From Pelomyxa schiedti (Eukaryota > Protista > Evosea), in the NCBI GenBank assembly GCA_020536535.1, contig JAHLWZ010000910.1:1-50641 (forward strand): DNA of 50,641 nucleotides. The letters are read 5' to 3'. How positions within the stretch are numbered: the first letter of the stretch is position 1; every line of letters begins with the position of its first letter. The notes under the pieces were generated by a model. It saw nothing but the letters and a program-made list of their open reading frames with translations, did not search any database and was not told the DNA's origin. Made by a program: the position numbers and the translations under genes. This document shows positions 18,128 through 49,925 of this stretch, piece after piece.

Positions 18128-21100
18128 CTAACTTTCGGTTGGAGACTGGTAGAGCTGGTTTGTTGACATTCCAACCCCTGTCTCGTCGTAAATGGGGTTC
18201 TCTGTGATGCCTGCACTCGTACCATCAAGCAGCGAGTTTGGAATGTACCAATTGGCTCCGTACCGAATGTGCTTTTTTTTTTTTTTTTTTTTGTTAGATC
18301 TTCGGCCTTACCAGTTATAGTTATATTTTATTATTAGTTTACTATCGTTGGTATTGGAATGAGGAATTCACCTTGTACAGGAAAAAGCCAGCAACACCGG
18401 CAGCACAGCAACCAATTACGAGGCCAATAAAGGTGCCTGAAGCTATCAGAGAGTTTTGTTTTATCTCTGCATTGCACTTGCTAGCGTCCGTTGTTGTTCC
18501 GCCACACCGTCCACACACGTCGTTTGTCAGATTGCTATACTGCTTCCCGTCACAGCCGAGACAAGTTGAATTGCCATTGCACACTCCGCAGTAGTCATAC
18601 AAAAGGCCAGATCCAGGTACACCTAAAAAGTGGGGAAAATGAGCCTAATGAGGAAAGGTTCATGTGGAATCGGTTCTCACCATCACATCCCATGCAAGTC
18701 TGGTTATCCCCTCCACATACACCACAAGCATCCCAGTGCTTGCCACTCCACAGGCGCGCGTCGCACCCAATGCAAGTTGTGCCGTCTCCACCACATATTC
18801 CGCAAGTGTCATATAAAAGGAATGACCAAGGTACACCATCACACCCGACACAAAAGTTGGACCCGCCGCAGACATCACACCTAGGGAAATTTAGAGAAAA
18901 CATTGCAAACAACCTCCATACTTGTCGTAAACTGCTCCAGACCATGCAATATAATCACACCCAAAGCACGCGTTGCTCTCTGAAGCATTTGTAACGCAGG
19001 CACCACACATGTCATATTGCAGGTTCCCTGGTTTGCCATCGCACCCAATGCAATCATCTTTCCCTCCACAGACACCGCATTTATCAATCTGCTGCTCAGA
19101 CCACGGAACGTGGTCACAACCCAAGCACGTATTGTTTCCCTCACAGACTCCACAATAGTCATATGTGGATCCAGACCAGGGGATTCCATCACACCCAAGA
19201 CAGTCATTAGTTCCGCCGCAAACGCCGCAACTGTGCAAATCAATAAGGCGGTTTTCACGTTGCGAAATGAGTGGCTTACCTATCTTCCACTGTCCCAGAC
19301 CACGGCACATAGTCGCACCCAAAACAAAGATTCATCATCGATGTATTCGATGTGCATTCCCCGCAGGAATCATATTGCATGTACCCAGGAAGCCCATCAC
19401 AACCAATGCACTCATTAGAGCCACCACAAATTCCACATTTGTCAAGTACCTGTGCTTCCGTTAATGGTATAATGGAAACGTAAAACATACTGCCCCAGAG
19501 AAGGGAACGTAGTCACAACCCAGACAGGTGTCATTGCCTTGGCAGACACCACATGAGTCATATCCGACACCTGACCACGCAACTCCATCACATCCAAGGC
19601 AGTTGTCGTTTCCACCACATATTTCACACCTTGTTTTTTTGTTGGAATTACATATGTGGAACGGGAATACTTGTCAACAACAGCCCCAGACCACGGTACG
19701 TAATCGCAACCACAACATAAATTTTGTTTGGTTGGATCCGATGTACACTCGCCGCAATTGTCATACTGCAAGTTTCCAGGGAGTCCATCACACCCAATGC
19801 ATTCGTTTGATCCACCACATATTCCACACTTATCGACTATCTGAGATAGGTGAGACTTCTACACAAAAAAGAAAAACATCCTCACAGATTTTGACCAGGG
19901 AATATAGTCGCACCCAAGGCAGGTATCATTCCCAAGGCATTCCCCACAACTATCATACTGTGAACCAGACCATGCAACACCATCACATCCAAGACATGCG
20001 TTTGACCCTCCACAAGTCTCGCAACTGTGCAGATACAATGTTATGAAAAATGAGAGTGCAAAATAACAACCTGTCTTCGACCTTTCCTGACCATGGGATA
20101 TAGTCACATCCAAGGCATTGATTGATTTTAGTACTGTCTGAAGTGCATTCGCCACATAAGTCGTAAAGAAGGTTCCCAGGAAGTCCATCACAACCAATGC
20201 ACTCATTGTGGCCTCCACAAATTCCACAGTCATCAAAATCCTGGACAAACACCTTAGACACCATGCAAAGCACCGAAGAGGTAAACTGCATACAGTTTTT
20301 GACCAGGGTATATAGTCGCACCCAAGGCATGTGTCATTCCCCATGCAGACGCCACAGGCATCATATTGCGACCCTGACCAGGGCTCTCCATCACACCCAA
20401 GGCATGCATTTGTTCCGCCGCAAATGTCGCATCTGAAACAAGTAATTATTATTGGGAAAATGGTACTGGGGGCAACTTGTCTGGTACTGCTCCAGACCAA
20501 GGGACATAATCGCATCCAAGACATAGATTCATCATCTCTGGATCCGAAGTACATGCTCCACACATGTCATATTGCAGATAGCCAACATTCCCATCGCACC
20601 CAAGACACTCGTTAGAGCCACCACATATTCCACATTTATCTACAACCTACAAGGACTGAGCAAGAGGTAACTAAGAATAGGCATACGGCATATGACCATG
20701 GCTCATAATCACAACCAAGACATGTGTCATTTCCGGAGCATGCGCCACAGTTATCATACTGTGCGCCTGACCATGGCTCATCGTCACACCCAAGGCAGCC
20801 ATTGGATCCACCGCAGATATCACATCTGTGTAATTTAAATCGCCCAGACAGTATAACACCCACACGGATTACCTGTCTACAGTGGTGCCGGACCAAGCAA
20901 CATAGTCACAACCAAGACAAAGATTTGCCAGAGTAATATTGGAAGTGCATTCCCCACATAAATCATACGGCAAGTTCCCTGGAAGCCCGTCACATCCAAG
21001 GCACTCATTACTACCTCCACAGATTCCACAGTCATCTACCTCCTATTTTTTATCATTATGAAATCCCACCATTTGATGTGGTACCGCATTTGACCATGGC

Positions 21101-24100
21101 ACATAGTCGCAACCCAGACAAGTATCATTCCCTAAACAAACCCCACACGAATCGTATTGAGAGCCTGACCATGGGTCACCATCACATCCAAGGCAAGCAT
21201 TAGTTCCTCCACAGATTTCGCACCTAGGGTAAGATTACATGAAACGAAGTTAAACACTATCCCACTTACTCGTCTGGCACAGAGCCTGACCACGGAACAA
21301 AGTCACAACCCAAACACAGGTTCATTTCGGAAGTATTAGTGGTACATTCACCACACAAGTCGTATTGAAGGTTACCAGGTTTCCCATCACACCCCAGGCA
21401 TTCGTTATTTCCATCACAAATACCACATTCATCAAATTCCTTTTCTACGATTACCAAAAAAAAAAAAAAAAGGTTCCACATACCGTTTTTGACCACGGGA
21501 CATAGTCGCAGCCGAGGCATGTATCATTCCCTAGGCACACGCCACATGAATCATATTGTGAACCTGACCAAGCAACATCGTCACATCCAAAGCAACTATT
21601 TGTTCCTCCGCATATATCACAACTACAAAGAGTTAGTAAGCCATTGCACAAGAGGCGCAAAAACCTATCAACTTCTTTATTTGACCAAGCAACAAAATCA
21701 CATCCAAGGCAGAGATTCATCAATGAAGTGTTGGTTGTACAGATGCCGCAGAGATCATATTGGAGGTTACCTGGTTCTCCATTACATCCTATGCACTCAT
21801 TGGTGCCTCCACATATGCCGCATTTATCTACCGTCTATCTGGCTTCAGAACTAAATTAAGTTGAAGAGATAATCTTACAGTATTTGACCAAGGAACATAA
21901 TCACACCCAAGACATGTCCCATTACCCAGGCATACTCCACAAGGGTCGTACTGCGCGCCTGTCCAGGGGATACCGTCACATCCGAGGCAGGTGTTAGAGC
22001 CTCCACAAATATCACAGCTTTTAGGAATTTTCAGTGGAAGTCAAGGCGATTCAAGGTTTAACTTATCAGGTTTCATCTCTGACCAGGGGACAGCGTCACA
22101 CCCAAAGCAGAGGTTCATCTCATCAGGATCAGAAGTACATTCACCACACATGTCGTACTGCATGTAACCCGGCTTTCCATCACACCCGAGGCAATCATCG
22201 CTACCACCACATATACCACATTGGTCAGGTACCTAAAAGCAGTCAAATCCTCACCACGAAGACCACAGTCAGACCGTTTTAGACCAAGGAACGAAATCAC
22301 ATCCCAAGCACGTGTCGTTTCCAAAGCACACTCCACACGAATCATATTGTTCTCCAGACCAAGCCACATCATCACAACCAAGGCAGCTATCAGAGCCTCC
22401 ACATATATCGCATCTGCAAACAAGTCAGAGAGCGCCATGAAATATTAAAGAAACCGGTCCAATTTCAGCCCGGACCATGGGATCGAGTCACATCCCAAGC
22501 ATAGGTTCATCTTTGTGGTGTTCGATGTGCACTCTCCGCACTGATCGTATTGAAGATTTCCAGGGAGACCATCACACCCAATGCACTCATCCTTGCCTCC
22601 ACAAACATCACATTTGTCCACCTCCTATTGGAATCAGACGGTTGTTACTCTGGTGGAAGCAGCACCGTTTTTGACCAAGGGATATAGTCACACCCCAGGC
22701 AGGTATTATTTCCCAGGCAAATCCCACAAGCATCGTACTGTGCGCCTGACCAGGGAACTCCGTCACACCCAAGACAGCTATCAGTGCCTCCGCAGATATC
22801 ACACCTAAAAGAGTTAAATAACAATTTGTTACAAAGAATCAGACTTGTCAGGTTCTGTGCCAGACCAAGGGACGTAATCGCAACCAAGACACAAGTTAAT
22901 CATGCTACTATTCGAAGTACATTCGCCACATAAATCGTAAGGAAGATTCCCTGGCTCCCCATCGCACCCAATGCATTCATTGTTGCCTGCACATATATCA
23001 CATTTGTCAACAACCTGAGCTAAGTTACAAAAGCAATTCTTTATGTGCATATGCTTGTGCAAACCGCGTTTGACCACGGCACGAAATCACAACCAAGACA
23101 TGTATCATTCCCGGCACAAACGCCACAGTTATCATACTGGGCGCCTGACCATGGCGCATTGTCACACCCAAGGCATTCGTCCGTTCCACCACAAATATCA
23201 CAGCTATATCCCGTTATTTGAGGTTTGTTAGGGTGGAAAAGAACTTGTCAGGCTTCTTGTTTGAAAACGGAACGTCATCACATCCCAGACACGAGTTGAC
23301 ACTATCAGGATCAGATGTGCATTCTCCACACAAGTCATAGGGAAGATTGCCAGGGAGCCCATCACAGCCGATGCAATCATCCGAGCCTCCGCATATTCCA
23401 CACTTATCAACAATCTAGCCCAAAGTGAGCTTTCTAAAAAAAAAGTTACTTACTGTATTTGACCATGCAATGTAGTCACAACCAAGACATGAACTGTTTC
23501 CACCACACACACCACAAGCATCATACTCAGTGCCAGACCATGCGATGTCATTGCAGCCAAGACACTCGTTTGTGCCACCACAAACATCACAGCTGACCAT
23601 ACACGGTTAGAATTCTAGTGATTCTGGATGTTTGTCATACAGGTCATTCTTTTTGTTAGACCATGGGACATGATCACAGCCCAAGCACAAGTTCAGATCC
23701 TCAGTTACATTGGTGCACACTCCACACTGATCATATTGACGGTTTCCTGGGAGTCCATCGCAGCCGATACATTCATCTGCTCCACCACAAACCCCACATT
23801 TATCAATTTCCTGCAAATGAAAGAATTAACTGCCAGTGACAAAGCCAACACAAAGAAAACGCACTGCTTTTGACCAGGGTACGTAATCGCAACCAAGGCA
23901 GGTATTGTTGCCCATGCAAACACCACAGAAGTCATAAGTATTGTAAGACCAAGCCTTACCATCGCAACCAAGGCAGCTATCAGAACCACCACAAACACCG
24001 CATCTGGAGAATCCATTAGTGAAAATGTGAGATACATTTTGGGTACTACTGATCCTCATGCTTATTGGACCAAGCAACATAATCACAGCCCAAGCATAAG

Positions 24101-27100
24101 TTCATGAGGTCTGGGTCTGATGTGCATGCTCCACATTCATCATATGGAAGGTTTCCTGGATTTCCGTCGCAACCGATGCACTCATCGGAGCCGCCACAAA
24201 TGCTGCACTTGTCAACCTCCTGCATCGAATTAGTCTTTCCACCTATCACTCACATGCATACCATATTCGACCAAGGGACATTGTCGCACCCAAGGCAGGT
24301 GTTGTTTCCATCACACTCACCACATTGATCGTAAGATAAACTACTGGGCTTGTCATCACAACCAAAGCATGAATTATGGCCACCACATTCGCCACAGTCA
24401 TCTTCCTCCATTCCGGACCAAGCATGTCCATCACAGCCAACACATAAATCACCTCCAGCGCAAATACCACACTAGGAGATTTAAGTTTGGATTGGAAAGT
24501 TAGTCTGAATATACCTGGTCATACACTTTCCCACTGAAGCACACTCTGTCACAGCCCATTGCTCTGTTGAGTCCTCCACAAATGCCACAGTCATCCACAC
24601 CTTATGAGATATTAAAGGTATGATAGAGGTATTTATGAGCGTCAAGGTACTTGTATTACTCCAGGGTTCCTTGTCGCAACCGAAACAGCCATTGGACCCA
24701 TCACACTCTCCGCACTATTAATGTAAGGATGGCCAAAAAAAATATGCAATACCTCATCATACTCCAAGTAAGAGAACAGAACTCCATCGCATCCAGTGCA
24801 GGAACTGGTTATCAAATAAATAGTAAAAAGAACAGGAGAGGCCGGTACGAATTGTCGCCACCGCAGACTCCACAATCATCAAAGGCAATGGTATCCCATT
24901 GCACACCATTGCATCCAAAGCATTCCCTATTTCCACCACAAACACCACAGGCATCGTAGCGGAATCCACTGTAGACTAGCCCATCACATCCTACACCTAT
25001 GGAACTTAGACCAGAACACGCATTAAATATACTCACAGGCATTATCCCCCATGCAGACACCACAGGCATCCACTTGTGCAGTACTCCATGGGAGACCATC
25101 ACAACCCACGCACGTCATGGCAATAGGATTATTTGTGCAAATTCCACAACTACTAGCATTAGATTCCAAAGGTGATTGGAAGCACCTGCCTGTCATAGAA
25201 CCACCCAGAATTCGGAACATTATCACACCCAACGCAGTCTGGAAACCAATTTAAAAAAAAACTTCCAATTCAGTCTGGGACTACCTGCTTTTCCTTTGCA
25301 AACACCACAAACATCGAGGTCAGCCTTGGACCAAGGCACTCCTGTCAATAGTGCTTATTAGAAAACTACAGTGGAAATTTCGTCTACCATCACAGCCAAC
25401 GCAAGAGGTTCCATCACCACCACATAGGCCGCATTGATCATATTGCTTCCCAGAATAAGCCACACCATCACACCCATGACATTCATTCTAAATACACCCC
25501 GTTAGGGAGCTACATGTTCATTTTGGCAGTATACCGTGCCCTTGCAGACTAGACAGTCATCAAGTTCGGCTTTACTCCAGGCCTTATCATCACAACCTGT
25601 GCAATTATCCATTGCGAGATCTCCAGGCAGTAGGCATTGACCACACAAGTCATATGTATGCGATCCAAATGCCTCTCCATTGCAGTCAAAACAGGAATTT
25701 GTGCCTTGGCACACTCCTATATTCCAGGGACATTTACTTCATGAGTACCGTTTCATTGTATAAAGGCCCTCATACCACATTGATCGTCCTTTGCCTTGGA
25801 CCATAGAATTCCATCGCAGCCTCGACACGATGTCGTGGTTGCCGAACAGCGTCCGCACTCATCATATTGCAGGGGTGGTACAGTGGCGAGACCATCACAC
25901 CCAATGCACCTATGAACAGTTAGTGAGACTTGATCAAGGTAATATAAATGACTTACTTGTTTGTTCCATTGCAGACACCACACAAGTCGTATTCGGCTGT
26001 ACCCCATTTCAGGCCAAAGCAGTCTATACAGCTAGAGCCGTTTCCCCCACAAATTCCACATTGATCATACTACACCTCCGTTAAACCTTACTCGATGGGA
26101 AAAAATTCAATACCCCAGCAGGCGGAACAGTAAACAGGTAATCACATCTAACATCGAGGACATAAGAGTCCAATGAATTGAATTGAAGTGAAGTGAAGAC
26201 AACAAACCCCATGCAAGCATCAGAGCCATCACACACGCCACAGTTGTCCAGGTCCTTATTTCCATAGGGAACCTGCTGACAGTCAAGACCTGAAAAATTC
26301 ATCAGGAAAGAGAAAGGGGGTGGCAGAAGTACAGGCGTTTGATCCATTGCAGACCCCACAGAGATCATACCTATAGGCATAAATGTAAACACTTGATTTT
26401 TGGAGATATCTTACATAAGTTTGGAAGGTGTCCCATCGCAACCAAAGCAGGTGGAGTTATCTCCACCACAAACGTTACATGCATCTACTGTGGCATGACC
26501 GCCCAGCTGGCCAAAACAATCTAAGCAACTTGTGCCATCCCCCCCACATACGCCACATATATCCACCACACTGTGGTGAGGGATTAATTATACATTGGGC
26601 AATGTAGAGGGAAAAAGAACATACGCAATTCCATAGGGGATATTTTTACAGTCAAAGCAAGAGTTAGCATTGGCTAAGGTCACACAGAGCTGACATTGAT
26701 CATAGATCTTCCCAGAGTTGCTCACATGGTCACACCCTAAGAAATAAGTGTCACAGAAAGCATTATCTGGCAGCTGGACAAACCGAAGCAAGGAAATACA
26801 GAATAAACCACTATTGATGCAGCTCCCCATCCAAGAACATTCAGGGTTATAGTACAATTATTTACTGTACTACAAGCAACTGAATACATTTGCAACACGT
26901 GTAAAAGAAATACCTTGCGAGAAGAGAGACATTAAAGGCATATGTATGGAATGGAGACACCCCAGAATATGATGCTGGTGTTACTGATGTAACGTAGGAA
27001 TACTGGTCTGAGGAAACAACCATCTTCAGGATGTTTGTAAGAATAAATACCATTCTCAGAGATTACCTTCAAGTTAGATGTCAGGTACGTCAACCCCGCC

Positions 27101-28536
27101 AAAATGGCAGGAACTACATTGGAGCTATCAGAGGCCAGCTCAAATGATGAGCCAAAACTAGGAGTCAATTAGTCATTCCCGATTTGCTCTTAATAAAGCG
27201 CATACCCAAGTGTGGTTATGAGGCTATTGTACGTTGTCATAACAGTAGGGAAGGTGGATGCGTCGTTGTTAATAACCGCAAATAGAGGCACGACATTCTT
27301 ATTGGTCAGGTGAGTTTTCAACCCAGATGCGGAAGGATAGTCCTCTCCTATGGAAAAGTTAATTTCTGCTTCTAATGTTGTAAGGAACCTGTTCCATAAT
27401 ATCTACAAGAAGTTAGGGAGGTTCCTGCAGAATCAAGAAGAGTTCCAACTGGATAACAAGGAGGCGTGTAACAGTCATCCACACAATCATAGTTATTGAG
27501 CACAGTCGAATATTTATTGTTCCAACATGAAGAAAACTTCATTTCGCGCTCGTAATGGTAATTAATATCAGTTATGGTAACAATCATCTATTAGGAGTGA
27601 GGTACGGTGATGTGACTCGCGACCCAACCTTGAGGGAAGTTGATCTCCAGCCATAGTTAGTGCAAGTTGCCTGTACAATACCAACTAACTGTGATTCAGG
27701 GTCGTCGTAACCCCAGCCAATAACAGTTTCCTAGATATTTTCCATGTAAGCAAACCAACTTCCAGCAAGCACCTTCTGAACATACCGCTACTTTTGCTTG
27801 TAAACTATTATAGTTGCTGGACAAGGTAGAAAGTGGCCAAAATCCATTATCTACAGCATAGGTTCCTGCATCACCAGCAGGATTCAGAGGCTTATCTCCA
27901 AATGTAGAGTATGCAAAGTTCGTCTCTGGCCGAGAGCTTCGCACAGAGGATATAATTCGAGGAATTAGCATGGCCACCATCTGCACATCTGGCGTCATAC
28001 TTCCAGTAATATCCTAAATGGCATGTTTGAAGTACTTCTCACTTAAGGAGAAAAATACTTGACTGAGCCAAAGATCCAACGGCTGAAGTTCTGAGGGAGG
28101 AACATGGACTAAAATGGGCACCACGAGTTTTTGATTCGGCATCAAGAAGACTTCCGTGATAATAGGGTCAATCTTGGCAGTTCAAGTGTGAGGGGAAGAA
28201 AAACAATTTGCTATTGCGTACTACGGAACCAGCAGTTGTCCACACAATCTGACTGTGACTGTGGAACCAGGTCCCGTTAGTGCAAGATCCCACAGAGGGG
28301 CCTGTGGTGTAGTTAGAACCCAGAACGAAACCAAACCCATACGTTTTTTTTTACGATGGGAAATGTGTGCACTTACCAGAAGCAGTTCCTGCCATGCATT
28401 GTGCGGTGCCAGTACACCAACCACATGAAGTACTTTGTACACAAGTTGTGCATATCGTAGACGTGCAAGCAGTGGCTGCGTAACCACAGAAACATAGCAG
28501 TGTGCACAGAAACAGATACGGTACTGTTGGGGACAT
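18128..28536 (-). CDS. Giant integrin-beta-like type I membrane protein (SP-PSI-hybrid-betaI/vWA-hybrid-Cys repeat stalk-TM-NPxY tail), multi-exon
   Basis: Signal peptide MSPTVPYLFLCTLLCFCGYAATA; PSI CTSTICTTCVQSTSCGWCTGTAQC...C...W; IDPIITEVFLMPNQKLVVPILVHV; PLDLWLSQ|DITGSM; FAYSTFGDKPLNP; GYDDPESQLVGIVQATCTNYGWRSTSLK..MIVTITD; EDYPSASGLKTHLTNKNVVPLFAV; ELASDSSNVV. These are colinear with the remembered integrin beta consensus (PVDIYYLMDLSYSM, GFGAFVDKP, DAPEGGFDAIMQATVC...GWR...LLVFTTD, DYPS...L..KNINLIFAV, LSxDSSNV). Tail ...ENPIYDETGVGMSTNQLYQSPTES*; TAG at 18128-18130. Confidence 0.88.
18480..26730 (-). repeat. Protein-level Cys-rich tandem repeat stalk (GCDxxPWSxxxxDxCGVCGGxNxCL), ~75-85 units, with a ~400-bp four-unit higher-order period over ~18900-24430
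   Basis: Directly visible in the minus-strand ORF fragments. The same four-unit succession recurs about 14 times with introns at equivalent positions. Counts are by hand. Confidence 0.9.
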
Positions 28537-29061: not shown

Positions 29062-32000
29062 ATGAATGATGGTGGTGCAGGATGTACAGTGTGGATGCTA
29101 CTCGTTGTTGTGACTACTATGACAATGACGCGGCAATGCGGGGCTACCCTTCCTACGGTTTTTCTTGAGGCTGAATATTACACTACGGCGGGTAGTTGGA
29201 GCAAGGCATCGTCTTCTACCGAATGGGACTCGTGTGGTCAGTATGTCACGACATCCACTAGCACTGGTGGCACTGCTGTGACTTACTCTTTCTCTGTTTC
29301 CTCGTATGTGTTGGACTTATTTTTTTTTTTTTTCTTTTTCTTTCTTTCCTTTCAGTGGCTAACTAACTTGATTAGGGCGGGAACTTATTCTGTGTGGATA
29401 TTATCGAGGATTGCAAATAATCCTGCTGGTGCCTCTTTGTGGCTCAAATTTGACTCTGTGTGTACTTTGCCCTAGCCTGTTCCACTTACATTTCCTAGGG
29501 GTCAAACATAGCTTGGGATCTTGTTGTTTTTGGGAACTCATGGCGCTACGTGGCAGATGTGCCACTTACTTCCGGTTCACATACCTTATCCATCACAATG
29601 AGGTAGATTATTCACCCACTTTTTTTTTTGTTTACTTTACCCTATTAGGAAATACAAAACCAAATTATACATGGATAAAATAATGATTACGGATCCATCT
29701 ACACCAAAGATGGGCTACACAAATAAAGGGAAAGCTGCACAGAACATTCCCACAGGAAAATGTATCTCTTTACTCCCACTAGCACTGTTCTTACAAATTA
29801 CACAAAGGTCAACAGGTCTACTTCGAGGTATGCCTTTTATTGCTGTTAGATCTTACATTAGGCTATAGGCGGAATTTGCATCATCTCCAGGGTCTCCAGT
29901 TTCACTTCTTGCATCTTCTACAGCCTCAATGGAAGGGGCACTGTATAAGGCTGAGTCCAGTACAACATCTTGCAGTACAACTTCTCGCTATGCCAAAGTA
30001 AAGTGATTCTTCCTTCGCCAGCTTATATTTGCACAGTTCAATGTCACTTGGTCAGAGTCAGTTTATCGCCCTGTATGGGTCAGGGTGATTGCCCCCACTT
30101 CTTCATTGAATCAACTCTCCATTTCCGTATGGATCTCTTACCTCAATCAAGAACTCAACATGTTTAGTCCTCCTCTTGTGGGGCTCTTTCTTCATTAACA
30201 GTCTCCAATCCAAGTCAAGAGTTCCAATGGGTCCCAGTACCTCCTTTTTCAATCCTTACTTTTTTTTAATTCATTCTTCCCTAAGTTTCCTGACTTGGTT
30301 ACTGTACCAAATATCTTTTTAATAACCTTTGTTACTGGCTACACATATCTTGACAAAATTTATATTGGATGGGGGGTCCCTACAACCTCTGGAACTCCTG
30401 TAAACATTCCTAGTTCAAGTGCGCATTAATACATTCCCTTGTTTACTTTTGATACTCTTTCAAGGTACTAGTTGTTCAACATATAATGGTCTATGTGATC
30501 CTGTTACTTCCTGTAGTACCGGACCTGTATGCTCCAGTTGTCCAATTGGTTACACTGGATGTGGCAACATCCAATCTTGCAACAAACCCAATGGATGTGT
30601 GCGAACTGTTCCATATGGCTGCTTTTTTGATCGAAGCATTTCCTTATTTGCTTACACCGGAACAACTTCATTCCCAACAAGTTCTATTACTATAGAAATG
30701 TGGGCTTCAAGAGCTGTGTACGTTCCAACTTCAGATATTACCCTTTTGCACTATATTAGTGGTACTTCTGAGTTCCACATCCGTTATAATCCAACTATTG
30801 GATTGTATTTGTATGCGCACTGCTACCTTCCCATTGTATTCTCATTTCCATTCCAGGTACACTTCATTGGTATCTGTCAAGCCGACAACACCCATTCTTC
30901 TTACTCCTGATATCTGGACTCACATTGCTGTTAAGGGTAATTATTATCTTGGTAGGTTCTTATCTTCTTTTAGATTTCATATGATAGAACCACTGCCAAG
31001 TTCTATATAAATGGGGCTTTAGTGGCAACTGTTACAGCCTCTTCTCCTGTTATTACGTCTCCTGGAGTTATTTCTATAGGGAAAAAAGTGGGTAAGTGCA
31101 AATTTCCTTGATTCTTCTTGTACTCATTGTTGTAGTTGATTTCACGAAGGATTTGACACTTCCGGCCTTTGGGGTTGATGAATTGAGAGTGTGGTCAACA
31201 GTTCTAACCCAAGCAACGATTCAGAGCCTCATGGGTGCAACACTGACGACTTCACAGCCCAATCTTCTTCGTACCAAGTTTTTTTCGTTTTCTTTGAGTT
31301 CCTAATGTTTCATGAAGATGTGTGGAGTTTTGGTCCTGACACAGGATCCTGCAGTCCTGTAACAACTGAGACTTTTGGTTTGGTAACAATGACAACATCC
31401 CTGACTGAATGTATGAAAACTTTTTTTTTCAAGCTTACGGTCTCAGGGTATGCCCTCTATCAACTATATTGGGCAACTGGCGGTCCCGATTGGTATTCTC
31501 AGACAAGTTGGCTCACAGGTCAGCCTTGCTCAGGAACAAACCTCTCAAGCCCAGTGTGGTACGGGCTGGATTGTGACAATTCAGGAAGTGGTAGAATTGC
31601 TACCATGTGAGAATAACTGCACATTAGCTCTTTCTCACTTTTACTAGAAATTTGGCCTTTAATAACCTTGTTGGAACGCTACCTTCATCCCTTTTTGCAC
31701 CTTTTTCCAAGCTTTCTATTTTGTAATTAGCACATTACTAATGATCGTCCCTTACACTTCTCAAGAATGGTTGATCACAACACATTAAGTGGTGCGATAC
31801 CAATAGATATAGGTTTCCTTACAAGTGCTGTTACAATGTTTCTTTCTCTCATTGTGAAACTCAACTAACCTTGCCTTGCAGATTGATGCAAAACAATCTT
31901 CTTCAATCTATGCCAACAACAATATCAACTCTAACTTCATTGCAAAAGCTGTGAGTTTGTGCAATTCTAGCTATGCGTTAATATTCATGTAGATATTTGC

Positions 32001-35000
32001 AGAACAACAATCTTACAGGAACAATACCTGATGTATTTAATTCAATGACATCACTGGTTTTCTTGTACATGCAATATAACTCCTTGTCAGGAAATCTTCC
32101 TTCTTCTCTTAGCAGCCTCTCAGCCTTAAAATATCTGTACCTCCCTTGCATAAAGAATCCGTAATTTAATTTCTCAACAGGGATTTGAGTTACAACAAGC
32201 TTTCAGGACTATTTCCTTCCACTATTATTAACAGCCTGATTTCCTATATGTAACACATTGACTGGAATCTTCTTTTGGTTAACATTATTAGGGATGTTTC
32301 TGGCAACTCCTTCTATGGCCAAATGCCAAACCGAGTGACAACAAGCAACTCAAACATGATACTGATGTAAAACAAATTCCTCTTTTCTCCCTTTTCACAA
32401 TCCAAAAAGGAATTTCACAGGCAACAAGTTTATATGTCAAGTGCCACCATTTATGAAATCTTCAACACTTACATTCCCAATTGATGTACATGGCAGTATT
32501 TTCTTTTGCCCTCTGAATAGTTTAGTAAAAACCGTTGAAGGAGCCTCCTGTGGTAAGATTCTTTATCGTTCTGGCTCTGTCCTAACTTGCTGTAGCACCT
32601 GTGACATTACTCTCCATTACACCCAATTCTTTCAACCTCTCCAACAGCTTTTCTGGTCAGACAGCCGTTATAAATGCCACAGGCCTAAATAGCTGTGCCG
32701 GGATACAAGTATATGTTCCTGGTGCTGGATATATTGCTCCTGTTTCCCTAACCGAATCCCTACTCACCTTCGTTATCCCTGCTCATTCATATGGCATTGT
32801 TCCAATACGGCTTATGTGGATTGGTTCCTACAATAATAACTCTGTTGTTTCATCAAATTCCCTCAACTTCAAATACTACTACCCATGCTCCCCACGGTGT
32901 GTGTCTCCATATGGGACTTGTGCTGGTTTGAGTGGTGTATGCATTTGCAATGGCACACATGGCGGTATGTCCAGGCCTTAAAATAAAATTTCAACCTCCA
33001 TTGCAGGCCCTGATTGCAGGTTGTATTCCTGCCCGGCTAATTGCAATGGCCGTGGTATTTGCAACTATACATCTGGTGTTTGCATTTGCAATGCACCATA
33101 TTTTGGGAAGTCTTGCAGTGCAGCCTCCATTTCATGTCCAAATAGCTGTTCCAGGTATTACCCCGTTTTATGCAATTTCAGTCTCATGAAATGCAGTCAC
33201 GGGCAATGTGATCTCTTCACAGGAAAATGTTCATGCTACCTCGGATATTGGGGTGCCAATTGTTCAAGCAAGACCTGCCCACCATACAATTACCCCTACT
33301 GCTCAACACCAAATGGGCAGTGCAATGGGACATCAGGCAAATGTGTATGTGCTCCAGGATGGATTGGAGATTCCTGTTCCATTCCTATCAAGACTTGCCC
33401 TGCTAATTGCACAAGTACAAACTATGGCCAATGCAACCAAGCAACTGGTGCCTCCTTTTTTTTTCACCCATCAAAATAGTCTAACCTCGAAAAGGTGTAT
33501 GCACATGTTTTACATATAAGGGACTTATTCATAGTGGGCCTAATTGCAGTGAAATAATCTGTAGTCCATCTTGCAAAAATGGAGGCGTGTGCAATACTTC
33601 CAGCAGCACCTGTGTTTGTCCAAAAAATTACTATGGCAAGGACTGTTCAACTCCAAGATTTAACTGCCCCGGGAACTGCACTGGCCCTAGTAATGGAGAT
33701 TGTAACACTCTTACTGGGAATTGCTCCTGTCGATCTGGCTTTTCTGTAGTTTCTCCATAGCGTTCCAATCTCAACTCTTGTAGGGTAGCAATTGCTCTTT
33801 GCGTATCTGTCCAGGCACCCCCCAGTGTAACTATCCCAATGGCACATGCGATACCTCCACAGGGCAGTGCTTGTGTAAGAACGACACGACTGCTGGCTAT
33901 TATCATACTGGTTACATGTGTCAGTATCTGAACCACTACTGTCCAGGGAATCCGGAATGCAGTGGTGCACATGGTCACTGCAACCCCCAGACAGGTGTTT
34001 GCATGTGCAATTATCCTTGGGTCCTTAATAACAATTGTTCTGCTGCTAAGTGTCCCAATGATTGTTGGGGGCATGGTACATTGTATGGATTATTTCATTC
34101 ATTTGAACTCGCCATAGGGGACTGTGATATTACACAAGGGAACTGCAAGTGCTGGGCCCAGTATAATACATCTGTTGATTGCCAATTCCTCTACAGTACA
34201 ATTTTTCGACTCTCCTCTCTTTCTCATTCTCATCAGTTGCTTGTCCATCTTCATGTAATCATGGCTACTGTGATACACGCAGTGGTGACTGTATATGCAC
34301 CTCACCTTGGACCAATACTGCCACTGAAAATTGTGCCACAAAATCCTGCCCAGGTGACTGTAACGCTGGGCTTACAGGAACGTGTGTCAATGGCACTTGT
34401 GTATGCAACGCAGGTTTGAGTCAGTCGTTTTGTAGACAGTTTTACATATTCTTGCAGGTTGGACTGGGAGCCAATGCACTGTTGTAAATAAGACTTGTAC
34501 AAGCAATTGCAATACTCCTAATGGCCGGTTAAATCTTTTTTCCCTTTTTCTTTATTAGTAACTAGATCTAGCTGTGACACGACAACTGGAGAATGCTTGT
34601 GTTATGGTTTGTATTATGGAGATAAATGCCAGTCTAGTGTGTCCCGTCCCTGCCGTATCACAACGGTCTCATCATTCAATAGAGTCATGCCTCAATAATT
34701 GTTCTATGCATGGAATTTGCAATACCACCTTGGGTTTGTGCACGTGTGGTAGTGGATGGGAACCACCAGATTGCTATGTAAACCTTTGTTCACTTGAAGA
34801 CTTCTGCACATCAAGCTTTCGGGGTACTTGCAATACCACAGGTGGGAATTGCATATGCAACTACCCATACTATGGAAGCAAGTGTCAGTACAAGATGTGT
34901 CCTTCGAATTGCAGTGGAAATGGCCTGTGCAATAACATTACGTACGTTGAATTTTTTTTTCATCTCTCAACTTAACTTATGATTCACTTAGTGGTGTTTG

Positions 35001-38000
35001 CACATGCCTGAGTGACTGGATAGGAACGGTATTCTATTTCCATCTTTTTTTTTTTTTGCTTTTCATCTTTTCCCCAGACATGCAGTACGTTTTCCGCTAT
35101 GTGCCCACCGACACGGGATAATGGGTGCTATGGGAATGGAGTGTGCAACCACACAAGTGGTTTATGCACTTGCTATACTGGTTACTTTGGTTCTGATTGC
35201 CATCAAAGTATGAACCCACCATATTACCACTTCTGATGAACAACAGAGTTGTGTCCAAATAACTGTTCTTCTCATGGACTGTGCAATTACACCACGGGAA
35301 CTTGCTCTTGTGCGCAGAACTATTCAGATCCAACAGATGTTGCTTGCAGTACCCCTTACTATTCTTGCATGTACTGTTTCATTCTGTGGTTTTTCTCTAT
35401 TTACCTCTATAGTGACAATTTATGTTCGGGAAATGGTTACTGTAACCATCTCGAAGGCAAGTAGAAACCAATTCATTCCAATTCTAAATGACCTCTTGTC
35501 AGGCAATTGTTTCTGCTATTATGGCTTCTATGGAAACGTTTGTCAGTACAAGTACTGCCCTTCTAAATGCGAAGAGCATGGCACATGCAATACGGTATGA
35601 CTTTTGAAACCAAAATATCCTAATTTGCTACTTCAGACAACTGGGATTTGCAAGTGTAACCCTCATTGGTTAGGCGACTCGTGTTTAGAGGCCAACTGTA
35701 TGCCACTGATGTAAACACTACCATTTTTGAATTTTTCCATAGATTCCTGCCCAAAGAATTGTTCTGGGCCACATGGGCATTGTGACAAAACTACAGGCCT
35801 TTGTACCTGTTTTTCTCCATACTCACAGCCAGATTGTTACTATGGTGCGTCTCCCCATCTCCCACTTCACTTTTCACTCATTCTTCTAGCCTCTTGTCTT
35901 CTGAACTGTTCTTTCCCACATGGTGTCTGTGACAAGTTTACCTCATTCCTGAGTCTTTTACATCTCAACCATCTTTTAGCTTGACTGGATCTTGTTCTTG
36001 CAATGAATCTTTTACAGGAAAAGGGTGTCAGGTTGCTAATTTTACTTGTAAGCCAAGCTGCAAGAGTGGAATGTGTAATACAATGTATGCTTCCCCTTGT
36101 TTTTTGCCCTGAAGTCACCTTCAAAACCAGGAATGGCCAGTGCATATGCAACTCAGGCTATTATGGCACCTCGTGTGAATATAAAGAATGTGGTGGCAAA
36201 ACCCCCTGTTCGGGTCATGGTGTCTGTGATAATACAACAGGAATTTGCACTTGCTCCACAAATTTCACAGGGCCTTCCTGTGAAGTACCCAATTGTATAT
36301 TGTTTTACTTTCCATTAATGGAACTAAAAAAAACCTATTGCACAGATCCCTGCCCAAATAACTGCACAGGGTCACATGGACACTGTGACCCAAATCGTGG
36401 ACAATGTGCATGCTTCTCTCCCTGGCTACTCCCTGATTGCCACTATGGTTATTACCTTTGTACTACCTTCCTCCTAAAATTCAGAAAGGCCAATGCCAAC
36501 TGAACTGTTCATATCCTCATGGAAATTGTGATAAGTAGGTCCCCGTATCACAAGCCAGGCTCACCTTTTTAGGTTGACAGCAACATGCTCTTGCAAAACG
36601 TTCTACACTGGGAAAAGTTGTCAAATTGCAAATTTTACATGTTCCCCTACATGCAAAAATGGAACATGCAATACCCAGTATGCCTTTCACACGTAACTTC
36701 TAAGTCTTATCAAAGTGTAGGAATGGGGATTGTGTTTGTTATGGGGGGTATTGGGGGATATCATGCGAGTATAAATCGTGTCCCACAAAGTGCGAACTGC
36801 ATGGCATATGCAACAATGTGTGTTATTTTTTCCCCCTTTTTTTACCTAACATTCCTTGGTTCAGAATACTGGTATTTGTATGTGTTATCAAAACTGGACC
36901 GGCTCAAACTGTCTAGAGGCTGATTGTAAAGTTCCACTTAAAAGCCCTAAACACCAACAATTCTAGATACTTGTCCTAATAACTGTTCTGGCTCCCATGG
37001 CAATTGTGATCAAACCAGTGGTCATTGCGCCTGCTACTCTCCTTGGACACTACCAGATTGCTATTATGGTAGCACTCCATATTGATGCTCTTTATTAACT
37101 CAACATAGCCCAATGCTCTCTCAACTGTTCATATCCACACGGCCAGTGCAATAAGTTTGTAATAGAAACACCACCCACAAGAAATAACTTTTTTTAGACT
37201 CACTGGCGTGTGTGCATGTCAGACAGGATACACAGGAAAAGGGTGCCAGATTGCCAATTTCACTTGCAGTCCTCCATGTGAAAGTGGATCCTGCAACTCA
37301 CAGTACTCTTGAAGCATAGTTCTGTTTTGCTCATGACATTTCAGGGATGGTAAGTGTGTCTGCCTTGCTGGGTACTATGGGAGCTCTTGCCAGTACAAAT
37401 CCTGTCCTTCAAAATGTGAAATACATGGCACTTGTAATAATGTATGCTGGAATTTGGGAACTTTTATATGACAGAATCTAGCTAACTGGTGTTTGTACCT
37501 GTGCGCAAAACTGGACTGGCTCGAGTTGCATGGAGGCTAATTGTAAACTTATTCTGCATTCTGCTGTTTTGTATTGATTTTAGACAGATAAATGCCCGAT
37601 GAATTGCTCAGGCACACATGGCAACTGTGACAAAACAACTGGAAAATGTGCTTGCTACTATCCCTGGAACCTTCCAGACTGTTACTATGGTTATAATCTA
37701 CTTAGGTAAATTCGCGCTAACAATCAATAGCACAATGTTCCCTTAATTGCTCTTATCCACATGGGTCTTGTGACAAGTATCGTGCCTGCTTGTAACTTTT
37801 TGTACCTTAAAAATACCAGGACAACAGGAGTATGTAATTGTCAGAAGTTTTACACAGGCAAGGGTTGTCAGATAGCGAATTTTACTTGTACACCTTCCTG
37901 CCAAAATGGGAGTTGCAATGCACAGTACTCTTCCTATTAATTCACGGAATTTCTTATATTTGCAGAACGGGACATTGTGTGTGCTTTGGTGGGTACTGGG

Positions 38001-41000
38001 GCCCGTCTTGCGAGTACAAATATTGCCCTACAAAATGTGAACAGCATGGCATTTGTAATAATGTGCATAAACTTTGTTTGTTTCTCCTGTTCTCAACAAC
38101 AAAACAATCCTTCAGGTTAGTGGCATCTGTATGTGTAATCAAAACTGGACTGGTGTGAACTGTCTAGAGCCTGATTGTACTTCTTCTTTCGTCTCCTCTG
38201 GGGATTAATTGTAATCATTGCAGATCCCTGTCCCCATAACTGTACAGGCTCCCATGGTCACTGTGATAAAACCACTGGAACATGCGCTTGTTACACACCC
38301 TGGATCCTACCAGATTGCTATTATGGTTGAATAACTTTCTTCTTGCTTGTTTAATGGCGTAATCAGCTAAATGTGCTCTTAACTGCTCATATCCACATGG
38401 CACTTGTTCTATGTAATGCTTCCGGTTTTTTTTTTCTTGGTAAATGGACAAAAGACTGAATGGTACATGCGCATGCCAGAAGTATTACACTGGACAAAGT
38501 TGCCAGATTGCCAATTTCACCTGCACGCCCTCTTGTTTGCATGGCTCATGCAATTCCCAGTAGATTTCCTCCCCCCCCGGGTTTATATTCACTGGCTTTC
38601 AGGAATGGTCAGTGTGTTTGCACTGGAGAATACTATGGACCTGGTTGTGCCTATAAACACTGTCCCTCGAAATGTGAGGTTCATGGTGTCTGTAACAATG
38701 TAAGTATGATGGCACTCTTGACAAATAAATAAAATATCTCTTTTTTTACAAAGATAACTGGAGTTTGTACGTGTGCACAAAATTGGACTGGCTCCAACTG
38801 CTTGGAACCTCATTGTATCTCCCCTTTCTTTACACAACCAATTAAACACCGTTAGATCCTTGCAGCCGAAACTGTTCAGGGTCCCATGGAAACTGTGATT
38901 CGACCATTGGCAAGTGCGCCTGCTATTCCCCATGGACCCTGCCTGACTGTTACTATGGTAACTCCATTATACAATTTCGACTTACTGCTTTTAGCAACAT
39001 GCCCTCTAAACTGCTCTTATCCTCATGGGACCTGTGATAGGTTACAAAAAAACTTCTCCTTTTCATTCTTATTTTTTCCAGTCTTACTGGGAAATGTACC
39101 TGTAAGACATATTATTCTGGTAGTAGTTGCCAGATTGCAAACTTTTCGTGTGTCCCAGCCTGCAAGCATGGCTCCTGCAATTCCTTGTCTGCTAAAGTTC
39201 CTTTAATATTTCTGACATACTTTAGGACTGGAGAGTGTATTTGCTTCGGCGGATTTTATGGTACATTATGTGAATACCAGTACTGCCCTACCAAGTGCGA
39301 ATTACATGGTGTCTGCAATGCGGTAACTCTCTAGTAACGATTCTTTTTTCTATGTTTTGATTATCAACAGACAACTGGCATTTGTGGTTGCAGTCAAAAC
39401 TGGACCGGGGCGTCATGCATGCAAGCTAACTGTATTTCTTATTGTACATTGAAGGGAAAATTCTGAACACAAATAGTTCCGTGTCCAAACAATTGCACTG
39501 GTGGCCATGGTCATTGCAATCACGTAACTGGTACATGCTCCTGCTTTTCTCCTTGGATGGCACCTGATTGCCTTATGGGTATGTTTTTCTTGGTCTAAAT
39601 TATAGATTCTAACCTTAAACTAGCCCAATGCAGTCTTAACTGTTCATATCCAAATGGAGTTTGCAATAAGTTACCAATCAACCAAGTTTTACTTTTTCTC
39701 AGTACACCTAGGACAACTGGAGTATGCCATTGCAAAGCAGAGTACACAGGGAAAACTTGCCAAGTAGCCAACTTTTCTTGTCACCCTTCATGCATCAATG
39801 GAGGCGCATGCAACACACAGTATGTGAGAACTACAAATTCCAAAATTAAATATATTTGTACAGAAATGGTAAATGTGTATGCTATGGTGGTTACTATGGG
39901 AACTCCTGTGAATACAAATCTTGCCCTGCGAAATGTGATGTTCACGGGTTCTGCCACAATGTATGCTCAAATAGGACATTTGGGAAAATCCCTCATACTT
40001 CTCTCAGGATACCGGTTTATGCACCTGCCTACAAAATTGGACAGGAACAAGTTGCATGGAGGCAGATTGTATCGATTACTCTTTCCCGCGCATATCTCAT
40101 ATCTTTTTTCCACCCTCAGATTCCTGCCCAAACAATTGCACTGGGGTACATGGCCACTGTGATCACACGGTTGGAAAATGTGCCTGCTATTCTCCCTGGA
40201 TTCTTCCTGATTGCTATTATGGTTGAAAAGGAATTTTAAATTTAGTGCTCATATCACATAGCTTATTGTCCTTTGAACTGCTCGTATCCCAAGGGTGATT
40301 GTAATGTGTATGTCATAGGCTATCTGTTCTTCACTAACCTCTCCAGTTTGACTGGAATATGCTCTTGCAAAGATCACTACACTGGAAAGAATTGTCAAAC
40401 TGCCAATTTCTCGTGTTCACCAGCTTGTAAAAATGGAGACTGTAACACACAGTTTGATTCATTCCTTTTTGGTTTTTGCTATTCTTACTTGCGTTTTTTT
40501 TAGAAACGGCAAATGTGTTTGTCTTGGGGGGTACTATGGTTCTTCTTGTGAATACAAGTACTGCCCCTCAAAATGTGAACAGCATGGTATTTGTAATAAT
40601 GTAAGCTTTCTTTCTGTTTTTTAAACCCTTTGACTTTGTTTAGAACACTGGAATTTGTGTGTGCAATGGAAATTGGACTGGGAACTCTTGCATGGAAGCA
40701 AATTGTATGAGTTTTTTCCTTTATTGTTTCTTACAAGTTATACTAGATGAGTGCCCCAAGAACTGTTCAGGGAGCCATGGACATTGTGATGCCACGACCG
40801 GTGTTTGTTCTTGCTTCTCCCCCTGGACCCCCACTGATTGCAGCCTTGGTAATTAGATTAATGTAATGCGCCTAGGACTAACATCGATTTAGCAACATGC
40901 GCACTGAATTGCTCTTATCCTCATGGTGTTTGTGATAAGTGTGTAATAGCAACTTTTACTCTTCCGTTCAATTTCCATAGGTTGAGTGGGCTGTGCAATT

Positions 41001-43127: not shown

Positions 43128-43162
<35 letters not shown>

Positions 43163-49200: not shown

Positions 49201-49925
49201 ATTTACATTCACTATGGAGATGCAGTTCTCGAACGGATGCATGCCGCCTCAGCACTAGAAGTTCTATTCTTTCAGCCAGAGTGCCGGGCCCTGCACAAGC
49301 TTGGTGTTGATGACCAGCTACAAGTTCATTCAACAGTTATGAGTCTTATCCTGGCAACTGACATGGCCAAACACATTGACATAATGGAGACAATGAAGAG
49401 CCTGGGGGTGGGCACTAGAACCACAACCGCTGCTCTTTTCACATCCAAAGCGGACCCTCAGTTTGTTAAATCAAATAAGATGCTGGTTCTGCAAGTACTC
49501 ATGAAGATATCTGACCTCTCCAATGTCATCCGGGACTGGCCAGGTTTTTACATTATAGTCCAAATTTCACTCTAATCACTGATGTAGTATGCAAGCAGTG
49601 GACATTCAACCTTGTGAAGTAATAAAATCGCTTTCCCATATCACACTAAAAAGAAAATACAGTGAATTCAAAGGGCAAGGAGAAGAAGAAAAACGGCAAG
49701 GAATTCCCACCAGTAAATTCATGGATGGCTCCACTACACCCCAGGAGATGCAAAACACGTAACTATCCAGTTACCAAAATTCTGACTAACATTGATAACA
49801 ACAGATTCATACCACTTATTGTTATACCACTTCTCAAGACGATCACCACACTCTTTCCCAACTTTGACATTCTGGAAAAAAGAGCCTGGGAAAATCTGGA
49901 GAACTGGCGAACAATGGCATCATAA
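46210..49925 (+). CDS. Membrane-anchored class I cyclic-nucleotide phosphodiesterase with extracellular dCache sensor domain, multi-exon
   Basis: TM1 WYEVLTIVAFSCCACVIVAAVCVVPLY; dCache-like EPTWTPPLFDPF...FYAPVYNAG...GYALITSNDGTLLA...IISWSQIPTANWIVIAV; TM2 IITISVIMACIVLIVSVSIAIYIGV. PDEase_I motifs WSFDVF, NPFHNYLHAADV, SHDYK|HPGVNNNFL, VLERMH, ATDMAKH, MKISDLSN, EMQNT|FIPLIVIPL. TAA at 49923-49925. Confidence 0.9.

What the first reader, a model, noticed from the sequence alone, without database searches (positions are those of the whole stretch)
26990..28190. betaI domain keeps the MIDAS but remodels ADMIDAS and SyMBS
Manual alignment to beta3 numbering: D119 is kept, S121 becomes T (DITGS, 27999-28013), S123, E220 (DDPE, 27695-27706), D251 (ITD), D158 (GDKP) and D217 are kept. 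The ADMIDAS D126 becomes P (MTPD) and SyMBS N215 becomes G. This predicts metal-dependent ligand binding with different allosteric Ca2+ regulation.
Basis: partly seen in the sequence, partly recalled or inferred. Interest (0 to 1): 0.7.

Follow-up and report, generated by a model that had tools for sequence, protein, structure and literature searches.

The report
Amoeba integrin-beta head, one calcium site degraded
This stretch encodes the metal-binding head of an integrin-beta adhesion receptor in an anaerobic amoeba (probably Pelomyxa schiedti); the main ligand-binding metal site is intact and one regulatory calcium site looks degraded, a pattern already reported for amoebae.

Summary
On the minus strand, seven GT-AG exons (28172 down to 26914) encode an integrin-beta betaI domain. 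Five of these introns, and two further downstream, are confirmed by spliced RNA contigs. The register is confirmed exon by exon through a 62%-identical Pelomyxa schiedti paralog and through a profile that matches only solved integrin-beta chains.

- **MIDAS:** complete (D-x-T-x-S, E220, D251). Thr at the second position also occurs in bacterial relatives.
- **ADMIDAS:** D126 is Pro and D127 is kept. Among the 17 aligned domains, Pro occurs here only in this protein and in the Mastigamoeba integrin beta. Only these two also replace the near-invariant beta5-alpha6 Thr with Ile. Human beta8, which has no ADMIDAS ion, replaces the same Thr.
- **SyMBS:** Gly at the N215 position is the usual state outside animals (13 of 17 domains). 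It is therefore not a special remodelling. The other four positions are kept.

A 2020 preprint already reported variable ADMIDAS in amoebozoan integrin betas, so this is a new member of a known kind. Altered Ca2+ regulation is plausible but untested.

The joined spliced model was not sent to any search or folding tool. Earlier notes of this scan cover this same window, not other DNA.

The parts
18128..28536 (-). Whole integrin-beta gene: signal peptide, PSI, hybrid/betaI head, long CGxCGG..CxGC repeat stalk, TM helix, NPIY/NQLY tail.
Evidence: ATG at 28534-28536. Stop-free segments list the repeats, TM and tail. Only the head was modelled exon by exon here.
28059..28172 (-). Exon E3: last hybrid-domain strand and betaI strand beta1 (ends ..QPLDLWLSQ).
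   Evidence: 63% identical to P0001. Profile positions 2-24. No RNA contig cover.
27786..28013 (-). Exon E4: beta-MIDAS motif DITGSMTPD, alpha1 helix and the D158 position.
   Evidence: 70% identical to P0001. Profile positions 25-95, 73.7 bits. The intron on its 3' side is confirmed by RNA.
27987..28013 (-). beta-MIDAS motif D1-x-T3-x-S5-x-x-P8-D9 (beta3 positions 119-127).
   Evidence: Translation. Ungapped alignment to the DLSYSMLDD motif of beta-2 via P0001.
27990..27992 (-). Pro codon at the ADMIDAS D126 (D8) position.
   Evidence: Pro occurs at this column only here and in Mastigamoeba P0016, among 17 domains.
27894..27896 (-). Asp at the SyMBS D158 position (FGDKP).
   Evidence: Invariant D-K-P in alignment A3.
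27629..27730 (-). Exon E5: SyMBS/MIDAS loop and alpha2 helix.
   Evidence: 65% identical to P0001. Profile positions 98-132. Both flanking introns are confirmed by RNA.
27695..27718 (-). Loop GWGYDDPE, aligned to beta3 positions 213-220: G215 (animals have N), Y216, D217, P219, E220.
27389..27587 (-). Exon E6: strand with the MIDAS D251 position (ITD, Asp at 27567-27569) and a Cys-rich insertion shared by the Pelomyxa paralogs.
   Evidence: Flanking introns confirmed by RNA.
27206..27347 (-). Exon E7: EDYPS..FAVIN, with Ile (27271-27273) in place of the conserved beta5-alpha6 Thr.
   Evidence: Pfam Integrin_beta E 7.6e-4 for this exon alone. Profile positions 172-209. Site table.
27067..27157 (-). 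Exon E8: beta6 strand, beta6-alpha7 loop SDSSN (27118-27132) and alpha7 helix.
   Evidence: Flanking introns confirmed by RNA.
26914..27023 (-). Exon E9: return into the hybrid domain.
   Evidence: RNA-confirmed introns at 27024-27066 and 26870-26913. Collinear with P0001.

Best explanation
The stretch encodes the betaI (VWA-type) domain of a type I amoebozoan integrin beta subunit. It is one of at least three paralogs in the Pelomyxa schiedti lineage. Shown: the gene is spliced and transcribed. Its head is collinear with paralogs whose head matches solved integrin-beta hybrid+betaI headpieces. All five MIDAS positions carry metal-coordinating residues (D, T, S, E, D). Inferred: the domain binds Mg2+/Mn2+ at the MIDAS and uses it to bind an acidic ligand residue, as integrins do. 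Inferred: the neighbouring inhibitory Ca2+ site (ADMIDAS) is weakened or lost. One of its only two side-chain ligands is Pro, and the nearby beta5-alpha6 Thr is Ile. The alpha1 helix would then be less restrained by Ca2+, and the receptor would respond little to Ca2+ inhibition or Mn2+ activation, as in human beta8. Inferred: the SyMBS is in the ordinary non-animal form (G-x-D-x-P-E plus D158), not specially remodelled.
For: Gene model and expression: GT-AG introns and spliced RNA contigs. Family: window exons tile P0001 at 43-70% identity. P0001 scores Pfam Integrin_beta E 4.9e-21, and its phmmer hits in the PDB are all integrin-beta chains or one beta-2-like protein. Profile A3 against the PDB gives E 4.6e-50. 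The AlphaFold model of the P0001 head aligns to beta6, beta3 and beta8 headpieces at Z 28-30, rmsd about 3 A over about 310 residues. Site table: MIDAS is kept. Pro at D126 and Ile at the beta5-alpha6 Thr occur only in the window protein and in Mastigamoeba P0016. Gly at the N215 position occurs in 13 of 17 domains. Literature: beta8 has Asn at D8 and D9 and Gln at the same Thr, and has no ADMIDAS ion. Changing D8D9 to NN in beta6 raised affinity in Mg2+ 6-fold and reduced the Mn2+ response (PMC6889490). ADMIDAS is variable in Amoebozoa, and the stalk motif DxCGxCGGx(3-6)CxGC is theirs (10.1101/2020.04.29.069435).
Against: No metal binding or ligand binding was measured. D127, the S123 carbonyl position and the D-S-S beta6-alpha7 loop are all kept, so a weaker ADMIDAS may persist. 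The window protein itself could not be folded, because its joined model has no reference. The fold evidence comes from a 62%-identical paralog that has Asp at 126. The structure tools return no coordinates, so site geometry was not inspected. No alpha subunit was identified. The comparison set is small (17 domains, only 5 of them eukaryotic).
Confidence: 0.72

Rival explanations
1. The ADMIDAS still works. D127, the S123 backbone carbonyl, the beta6-alpha7 carbonyl and water hold a Ca2+ ion, so regulation is essentially that of a typical integrin and the Pro is a neutral change at the start of the alpha1 helix.
For: D127 is kept and the beta6-alpha7 loop keeps D-S-S. According to PMC6889490 this loop orients the carbonyl that coordinates the ADMIDAS ion.
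Against: D8 and D9 are the only side chains that coordinate the ADMIDAS ion in typical integrins, and one of them is lost here. The near-invariant beta5-alpha6 Thr is replaced in the same two proteins that have Pro at D126. In Mastigamoeba D127 is also lost, replaced by Asn.
Confidence: 0.2
2. This paralog is drifting or has taken on a new role, and its metal sites no longer matter. It acts as a Sib-like adhesin or scaffold, without an alpha subunit and without MIDAS-mediated ligand binding.
For: It is the most derived of three paralogs at these sites. No alpha subunit was found in the window. The Pfam family vWA_SIBA-E also hits the paralogs.
Against: The reading frame is open across all head exons, and the spliced transcript is present in two RNA runs. 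All five MIDAS positions and four of five SyMBS positions are kept. The PSI and hybrid architecture and the NPIY tail are retained. Integrin_beta scores far better than vWA_SIBA-E.
Confidence: 0.07
3. The register is shifted, so the Pro and Gly do not sit at the D126 and N215 positions.
For: Single exons alone gave no PDB hit and mostly sub-threshold Pfam hits.
Against: The alignment is ungapped from D119 to D158 and from D217 to E220, through the paralog, HMMER and an independent profile. For position 215 the only open point is whether the Asn at 216 in many relatives is the structural equivalent. In either case the window protein has no Asn there.
Confidence: 0.01

Closest known systems
Type I amoebozoan integrin beta (Kang et al. 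preprint 10.1101/2020.04.29.069435), in particular the Mastigamoeba balamuthi protein EukProt EP00727 P004613 (P0016)
   Same: Signal peptide, PSI, betaI in hybrid, stalk motif DxCGxCGGx(3-6)CxGC and TM helix. MIDAS is conserved and ADMIDAS is variable. Mastigamoeba shares Thr at S121, Pro at D126 and Ile at the beta5-alpha6 Thr.
   Different: The window protein keeps D127, where Mastigamoeba has Asn. It has NPIY and NQLY in its tail, where the Mastigamoeba tail has no NPxY. It has dozens of stalk repeats, against the three to seven quoted in the preprint. On the tree it groups with the Pelomyxa paralogs, but a clade with Mastigamoeba is not rejected (p-AU 0.15).
Pelomyxa schiedti paralogs KAH3744682.1 (P0001) and KAH3759353.1 (P0020), both named 'exocyst complex subunit 4' in NCBI
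   Same: Collinear head, 62% (P0001) and about 45% (P0020) identical, with the same Cys-rich insertion after D251 and the same type of stalk and tail. Each lies head-to-head with a LamG/LRR/EGF_TEN gene.
   Different: P0001 has D126-D127 and the beta5-alpha6 Thr. P0020 has a fully animal-like set (DSSAS, DD, N-x-D-x-P-E). The window copy is the only one of the three with Pro at 126 and Ile at the Thr.
Human integrin beta8 (PDB 6OM1/6OM2; PMC6889490)
   Same: A natural integrin beta with an intact MIDAS but changed ADMIDAS side chains and a replaced beta5-alpha6 Thr. It has no ADMIDAS ion, responds weakly to Mn2+ and does not open its headpiece.
   Different: beta8 has Asn-Asn and Gln, whereas here it is Pro-Asp and Ile. 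beta8 also has a changed beta6-alpha7 loop, which is kept here as D-S-S. beta8 lacks the talin-type tail, whereas here NPIY is present. The resemblance is functional, not by descent.
Bacterial integrin-beta-like VWA domains (RTX and FG-GAP proteins P0003-P0017)
   Same: They match the Pfam Integrin_beta domain and share the DxS/TxSxxDD motif, D-K-P, G-x-D-x-P-E, the D251 position and the beta6-alpha7 (D/N)-S-S motif.
   Different: They have no PSI, hybrid, stalk, TM or tail architecture. All of them keep an acidic residue at D126 and Asp at D127.

Membership tests
Integrin beta subunit (Pfam PF00362 betaI domain) | Significant match of the betaI domain to the Integrin_beta profile. | tested here: met
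   The window was tested exon by exon only. E7 alone gives E 7.6e-4. Exons tile the paralog P0001, which scores E 4.9e-21 over profile positions 3-246 of 248. Exons tile profile A3, which hits integrin beta chains at E 1e-45 to 1e-50. The joined model was not scanned.
Integrin beta subunit | MIDAS: D119-x-S121-x-S123, E220, D251. | tested here: met
   The window has D-I-T-G-S, E and D. Thr replaces S121, as it does in P0001, Mastigamoeba and three of the aligned bacterial domains.
Integrin beta subunit | ADMIDAS: acidic side chains at D126 and D127. | tested here: not met
   The window has Pro-Asp. This feature is also not met by human beta8 and is variable in Amoebozoa, so it does not exclude membership.
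Integrin beta subunit | SyMBS: D158, N215, D217, P219, E220. | tested here: inconclusive
   Four of the five positions are kept. N215 is Gly, as in 13 of 17 domains compared. Whether the site binds Ca2+ cannot be told from sequence.
Integrin beta subunit | betaI domain inserted in a hybrid domain, preceded by a PSI domain. | tested here: met
   The model of the P0001 head aligns to hybrid+betaI of beta3 (1jv2_B residues 61-426) at Z 28.5. The window is collinear with P0001 from the signal peptide to the hybrid domain. PSI gives only a weak Pfam hit (E 0.02), and the PSI region of the model has low confidence.
Type I amoebozoan ITGB (Kang et al.) | Stalk repeats DxCGxCGGx(3-6)CxGC, a TM helix and a cytoplasmic NPxY/F motif. 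| tested here: met
   Dozens of such repeats lie between about 26700 and 18500. They are followed by a TM helix and a tail with NPIY and NQLY. The motif is as defined.
Integrin beta subunit | Heterodimer with an FG-GAP propeller alpha subunit. | not testable with these tools
   The tools include no eukaryotic genome search. No alpha-like gene was noted in this genome by earlier findings.
Dictyostelium Sib proteins (PF24909 vWA_SIBA-E) | The best family match is to the Sib-type VWA, with no PSI or hybrid domain. | tested here: not met
   For P0001, Integrin_beta (E 4.9e-21) scores better than vWA_SIBA-E (E 8.7e-10). A hybrid domain is present.

The most novel reading that the evidence does not exclude
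Pro at D126 together with Ile at the beta5-alpha6 Thr marks a naturally ADMIDAS-less, beta8-like class of amoebal integrin beta. It either arose twice in Archamoebae (Pelomyxa and Mastigamoeba) or is an old orthologous lineage. It works in a conserved two-gene module with the divergently transcribed LamG/LRR/EGF_TEN surface protein, which lies next to all three Pelomyxa integrin-beta paralogs and may act as partner or ligand in place of, or beside, an alpha subunit.
Probability: 0.2. Interest if true: 0.55.

Novelty: new member of a known kind. Interest (0 to 1): 0.3.

Why it matters
Integrin betas outside animals are known only from sequence surveys, and none has been studied biochemically. 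This locus is one end of a natural series within one genome. P0020 has all three metal sites in the animal-like form, P0001 is intermediate, and the window copy has a degraded ADMIDAS. That series could be used to ask whether Ca2+-dependent allosteric control of integrins predates animals. It also shows that Gly at the N215 position is ordinary outside animals, which corrects a tempting over-reading. In NCBI the two paralogs found here are named 'exocyst complex subunit 4', so this family is hidden from keyword searches.

Tried and rejected
- **Single exons against the PDB:** phmmer with E4 and E7 found nothing.
- **Pfam exon by exon:** only E7 hit Integrin_beta, below its gathering score. The register was therefore established through the paralog and a profile.
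- **Window's own protein:** three word-index protein searches returned only the two Pelomyxa paralogs and a few distant proteins. The window's own full-length protein was not retrieved, so it has no protein id.
- **Joined spliced head model:** it has no reference and was sent to no search, family-scan or folding tool. It was built only inside local scripts, for alignment and tree building with proteins already fetched.
- **Convergence or shared descent of Pro126/Ile311:** the ML tree implies two gains, but a window+Mastigamoeba clade is not rejected (p-AU 0.148).
- **Metal-site geometry:** it could not be inspected, because the structure tools return no coordinates.
- **Pseudogene reading:** rejected. 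The frame is open and the transcript is spliced.
Full report
**What is at the coordinates**

The window is intron-rich eukaryotic DNA. On the minus strand a gene starts at the ATG at 28534-28536. It runs through a signal peptide and a Cys-rich PSI-like exon, then the exons covered by the finding. After these come dozens of CGxCGG..CxGC repeats, a TM helix and a tail ending ..NPIY..NQLY.. near 18131.

I modelled the head as nine exons:
- E1 28536-28377
- E2 28301-28225
- E3 28172-28059
- E4 28013-27786
- E5 27730-27629
- E6 27587-27389
- E7 27347-27206
- E8 27157-27067
- E9 27023-26914

All eight introns are GT..AG and 41-75 nt long. Spliced contigs from two single-cell RNA runs, of the same study as the DNA source, skip exactly the introns between E4 and E9 and two further introns downstream. 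They show no sequence differences. E1-E3 and the E3/E4 junction have no RNA cover. They rest on gap-free collinearity with a paralog.

**The observation**

- DITGS at 27999-28013, with the full motif DITGSMTPD at 27987-28013
- the Asp of FGDKP at 27894-27896
- GWGYDDPE at 27695-27718, with DDPE at 27695-27706
- the Asp of ITD at 27567-27569

**Register**

The joined model was sent to no search, family-scan or folding tool. It was built only inside local scripts, to align it and build trees with proteins already fetched.

Single exons are too short for distant searches. Pfam found only E7 (Integrin_beta, E 7.6e-4), and PDB phmmer found nothing. An exhaustive phmmer search with E4 found a 1368-residue protein, P0001, that is 71% identical over that exon. 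P0001 is KAH3744682.1 of Pelomyxa schiedti, named 'exocyst complex subunit 4'.

Four results fix the register:
- The window exons E3-E8 tile P0001 end to end at 43-70% identity.
- P0001 scores Pfam Integrin_beta E 4.9e-21 over profile positions 3-246 of 248.
- The PDB sequence hits of P0001 are all integrin-beta chains or one beta-2-like protein. HMMER aligns its motifs without gaps to DLSYSMLDD, FVDK, GNLDAPE and ATDD of beta-2.
- A profile of 15 non-metazoan betaI domains (A3) hits beta-2 at E 4.6e-50 and beta-3 (3fcs_B residues 102-358) at E 2.3e-45. The window exons tile that profile in order, at positions 2-24, 25-95, 98-132, 133-170, 172-209 and 212-240.

**Fold**

The window protein could not be folded, because the joined model has no reference. 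This step is left out. An AlphaFold model of the P0001 head (residues 20-440, alignment A4) has pLDDT 80-95 in the betaI core. It matches only integrin-beta headpieces in Foldseek's top 50. VIA-align gives Z 28-30 and rmsd about 3 A over about 310 residues. For example, model residues 58-407 align to 1jv2_B residues 61-426, which is hybrid plus betaI.

**Metal sites in family context**

I aligned 17 betaI domains and tabulated the site columns. The set was the window protein, three Archamoebae proteins, one other eukaryote-like protein, panda beta4 and eleven bacterial domains.

MIDAS:
- It is complete in the window protein.
- Thr at S121 also occurs in P0001, Mastigamoeba and several bacterial relatives. 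It is an ordinary variant, and its hydroxyl can coordinate the metal.

ADMIDAS:
- Position 126 is Asp or Glu in 15 of 17 domains. It is Pro only in the window protein and in the Mastigamoeba balamuthi integrin beta (P0016, EukProt EP00727 P004613, motif DVTGSMQPN).
- D127 is kept in the window protein.
- The same two proteins, and only they, have Ile where the beta5-alpha6 loop Thr stands (FAVIN, Ile at 27271-27273). That position is Thr in 12 of the other 15 domains.
- Wang et al. 2019 (PMC6889490) report that this Thr is present in all human integrins except beta8. In beta8, Asn-Asn at D8/D9 and Gln at the Thr go with the absence of an ADMIDAS ion. D8 and D9 are the only side chains that hold that ion. 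Changing DD to NN in beta6 raised affinity in Mg2+ 6-fold and reduced the Mn2+ response.
- The window protein keeps the D-S-S beta6-alpha7 loop (27118-27132), so a weakened site cannot be excluded.

SyMBS:
- D158, D217, P219 and E220 are kept.
- Gly at the N215 position is the common state, in 13 of 17 domains, and it is the profile consensus g-g-n-D-t-p-E.
- Asn at 215 occurs only in panda beta4 and in paralog P0020.
- Many relatives have Asn one position later, at 216, where the window protein has Tyr.
- 'N215 becomes G' is therefore correct as an alignment statement. It does not mark a special remodelling of this protein.

**Paralogs and history**

A second Pelomyxa paralog is P0020 (KAH3759353.1). 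Its set is fully animal-like: DSSAS, DD and N-x-D-x-P-E.

The maximum-likelihood tree gives (Mastigamoeba,(P0020,(window,P0001))) with supports 94/88, 95/89 and 98/97. That topology implies two independent gains of Pro126 and Ile311. A tree that joins the window protein with Mastigamoeba is not rejected (p-AU 0.148). Shared descent, with later homogenisation among the Pelomyxa copies, therefore remains possible.

**Comparison with what is known**

Kang et al. (preprint 10.1101/2020.04.29.069435) described type I amoebozoan integrin betas, including one in the Mastigamoeba genome. These have the stalk motif DxCGxCGGx(3-6)CxGC, NPxY tails, conserved MIDAS and SyMBS, and a 'quite variable' ADMIDAS.

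The window gene fits that family in every feature I could test. The variable ADMIDAS, which is the core of the finding, is already on record for the group. No paper in the searchable library mentions integrins in Pelomyxa.

The paralogs' source names, the assembly GCA_020536535.1 and the duplicated neighbourhoods agree with that. I did not match the window itself to a named record.

**Verdict**

- MIDAS-dependent binding is a sound inference.
- ADMIDAS degradation is real at the sequence level. It is strengthened by the correlated Thr-to-Ile change and by the beta8 precedent.
- The SyMBS point is over-read.
- All functional consequences are untested.

This is a new member of a known kind, of modest interest.

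Noticed in passing
window 29062-45000 (+), L001 738-9533, L002 1480-9557: All three Pelomyxa integrin-beta paralogs lie head-to-head with a roughly 2000-residue Laminin_G_3/LRR/EGF_TEN gene. The neighbour of P0001 is collinear with the window's plus-strand gene and 60-75% identical to it. The preprint also reports a 'tenascin' ORF beside the Mastigamoeba integrin beta. This looks like a conserved, duplicated two-gene module.
   Followed up: partly
P0001 (KAH3744682.1), P0020 (KAH3759353.1): NCBI names both Pelomyxa integrin-beta paralogs 'exocyst complex subunit 4', which looks like a wrong annotation.
   Followed up: partly
P0020 residues 1940-2170; L002 10001-19296: The annotated P0020 model carries a PDEase_I domain after the integrin tail (the tail matches at about residues 1220-1248). 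It is probably a fusion with a downstream phosphodiesterase gene model. This window also holds a PDE gene, at 46210-49925, but on the other side of the pair.
   Followed up: no
window 27389-27545 (exon E6): After the D251 strand lies a Cys-rich insertion about 25 residues longer than in animal or bacterial betaI domains (..SSCW..YDC..DC..PPC..SC..). It is shared by the three Pelomyxa paralogs and is partly present in Mastigamoeba. In animal integrins this loop region faces the alpha subunit (the last point is from my own knowledge).
   Followed up: no
P0001 beta6-alpha7 loop (alignment): Paralog P0001 keeps Asp-Asp at the ADMIDAS but has Ser in place of the conserved Asp/Asn of the beta6-alpha7 (D/N)-S-S motif. 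The window copy shows the reverse pattern. The two paralogs thus differ at different ADMIDAS-linked elements.
   Followed up: no
window 18185-18307: The cytoplasmic tail starts with a run of Lys (KKKKKKK) encoded by a poly-A tract, followed by HIRYGANWYIPN. The segment after the Lys run is nearly identical in P0001 and similar in Mastigamoeba.
   Followed up: no
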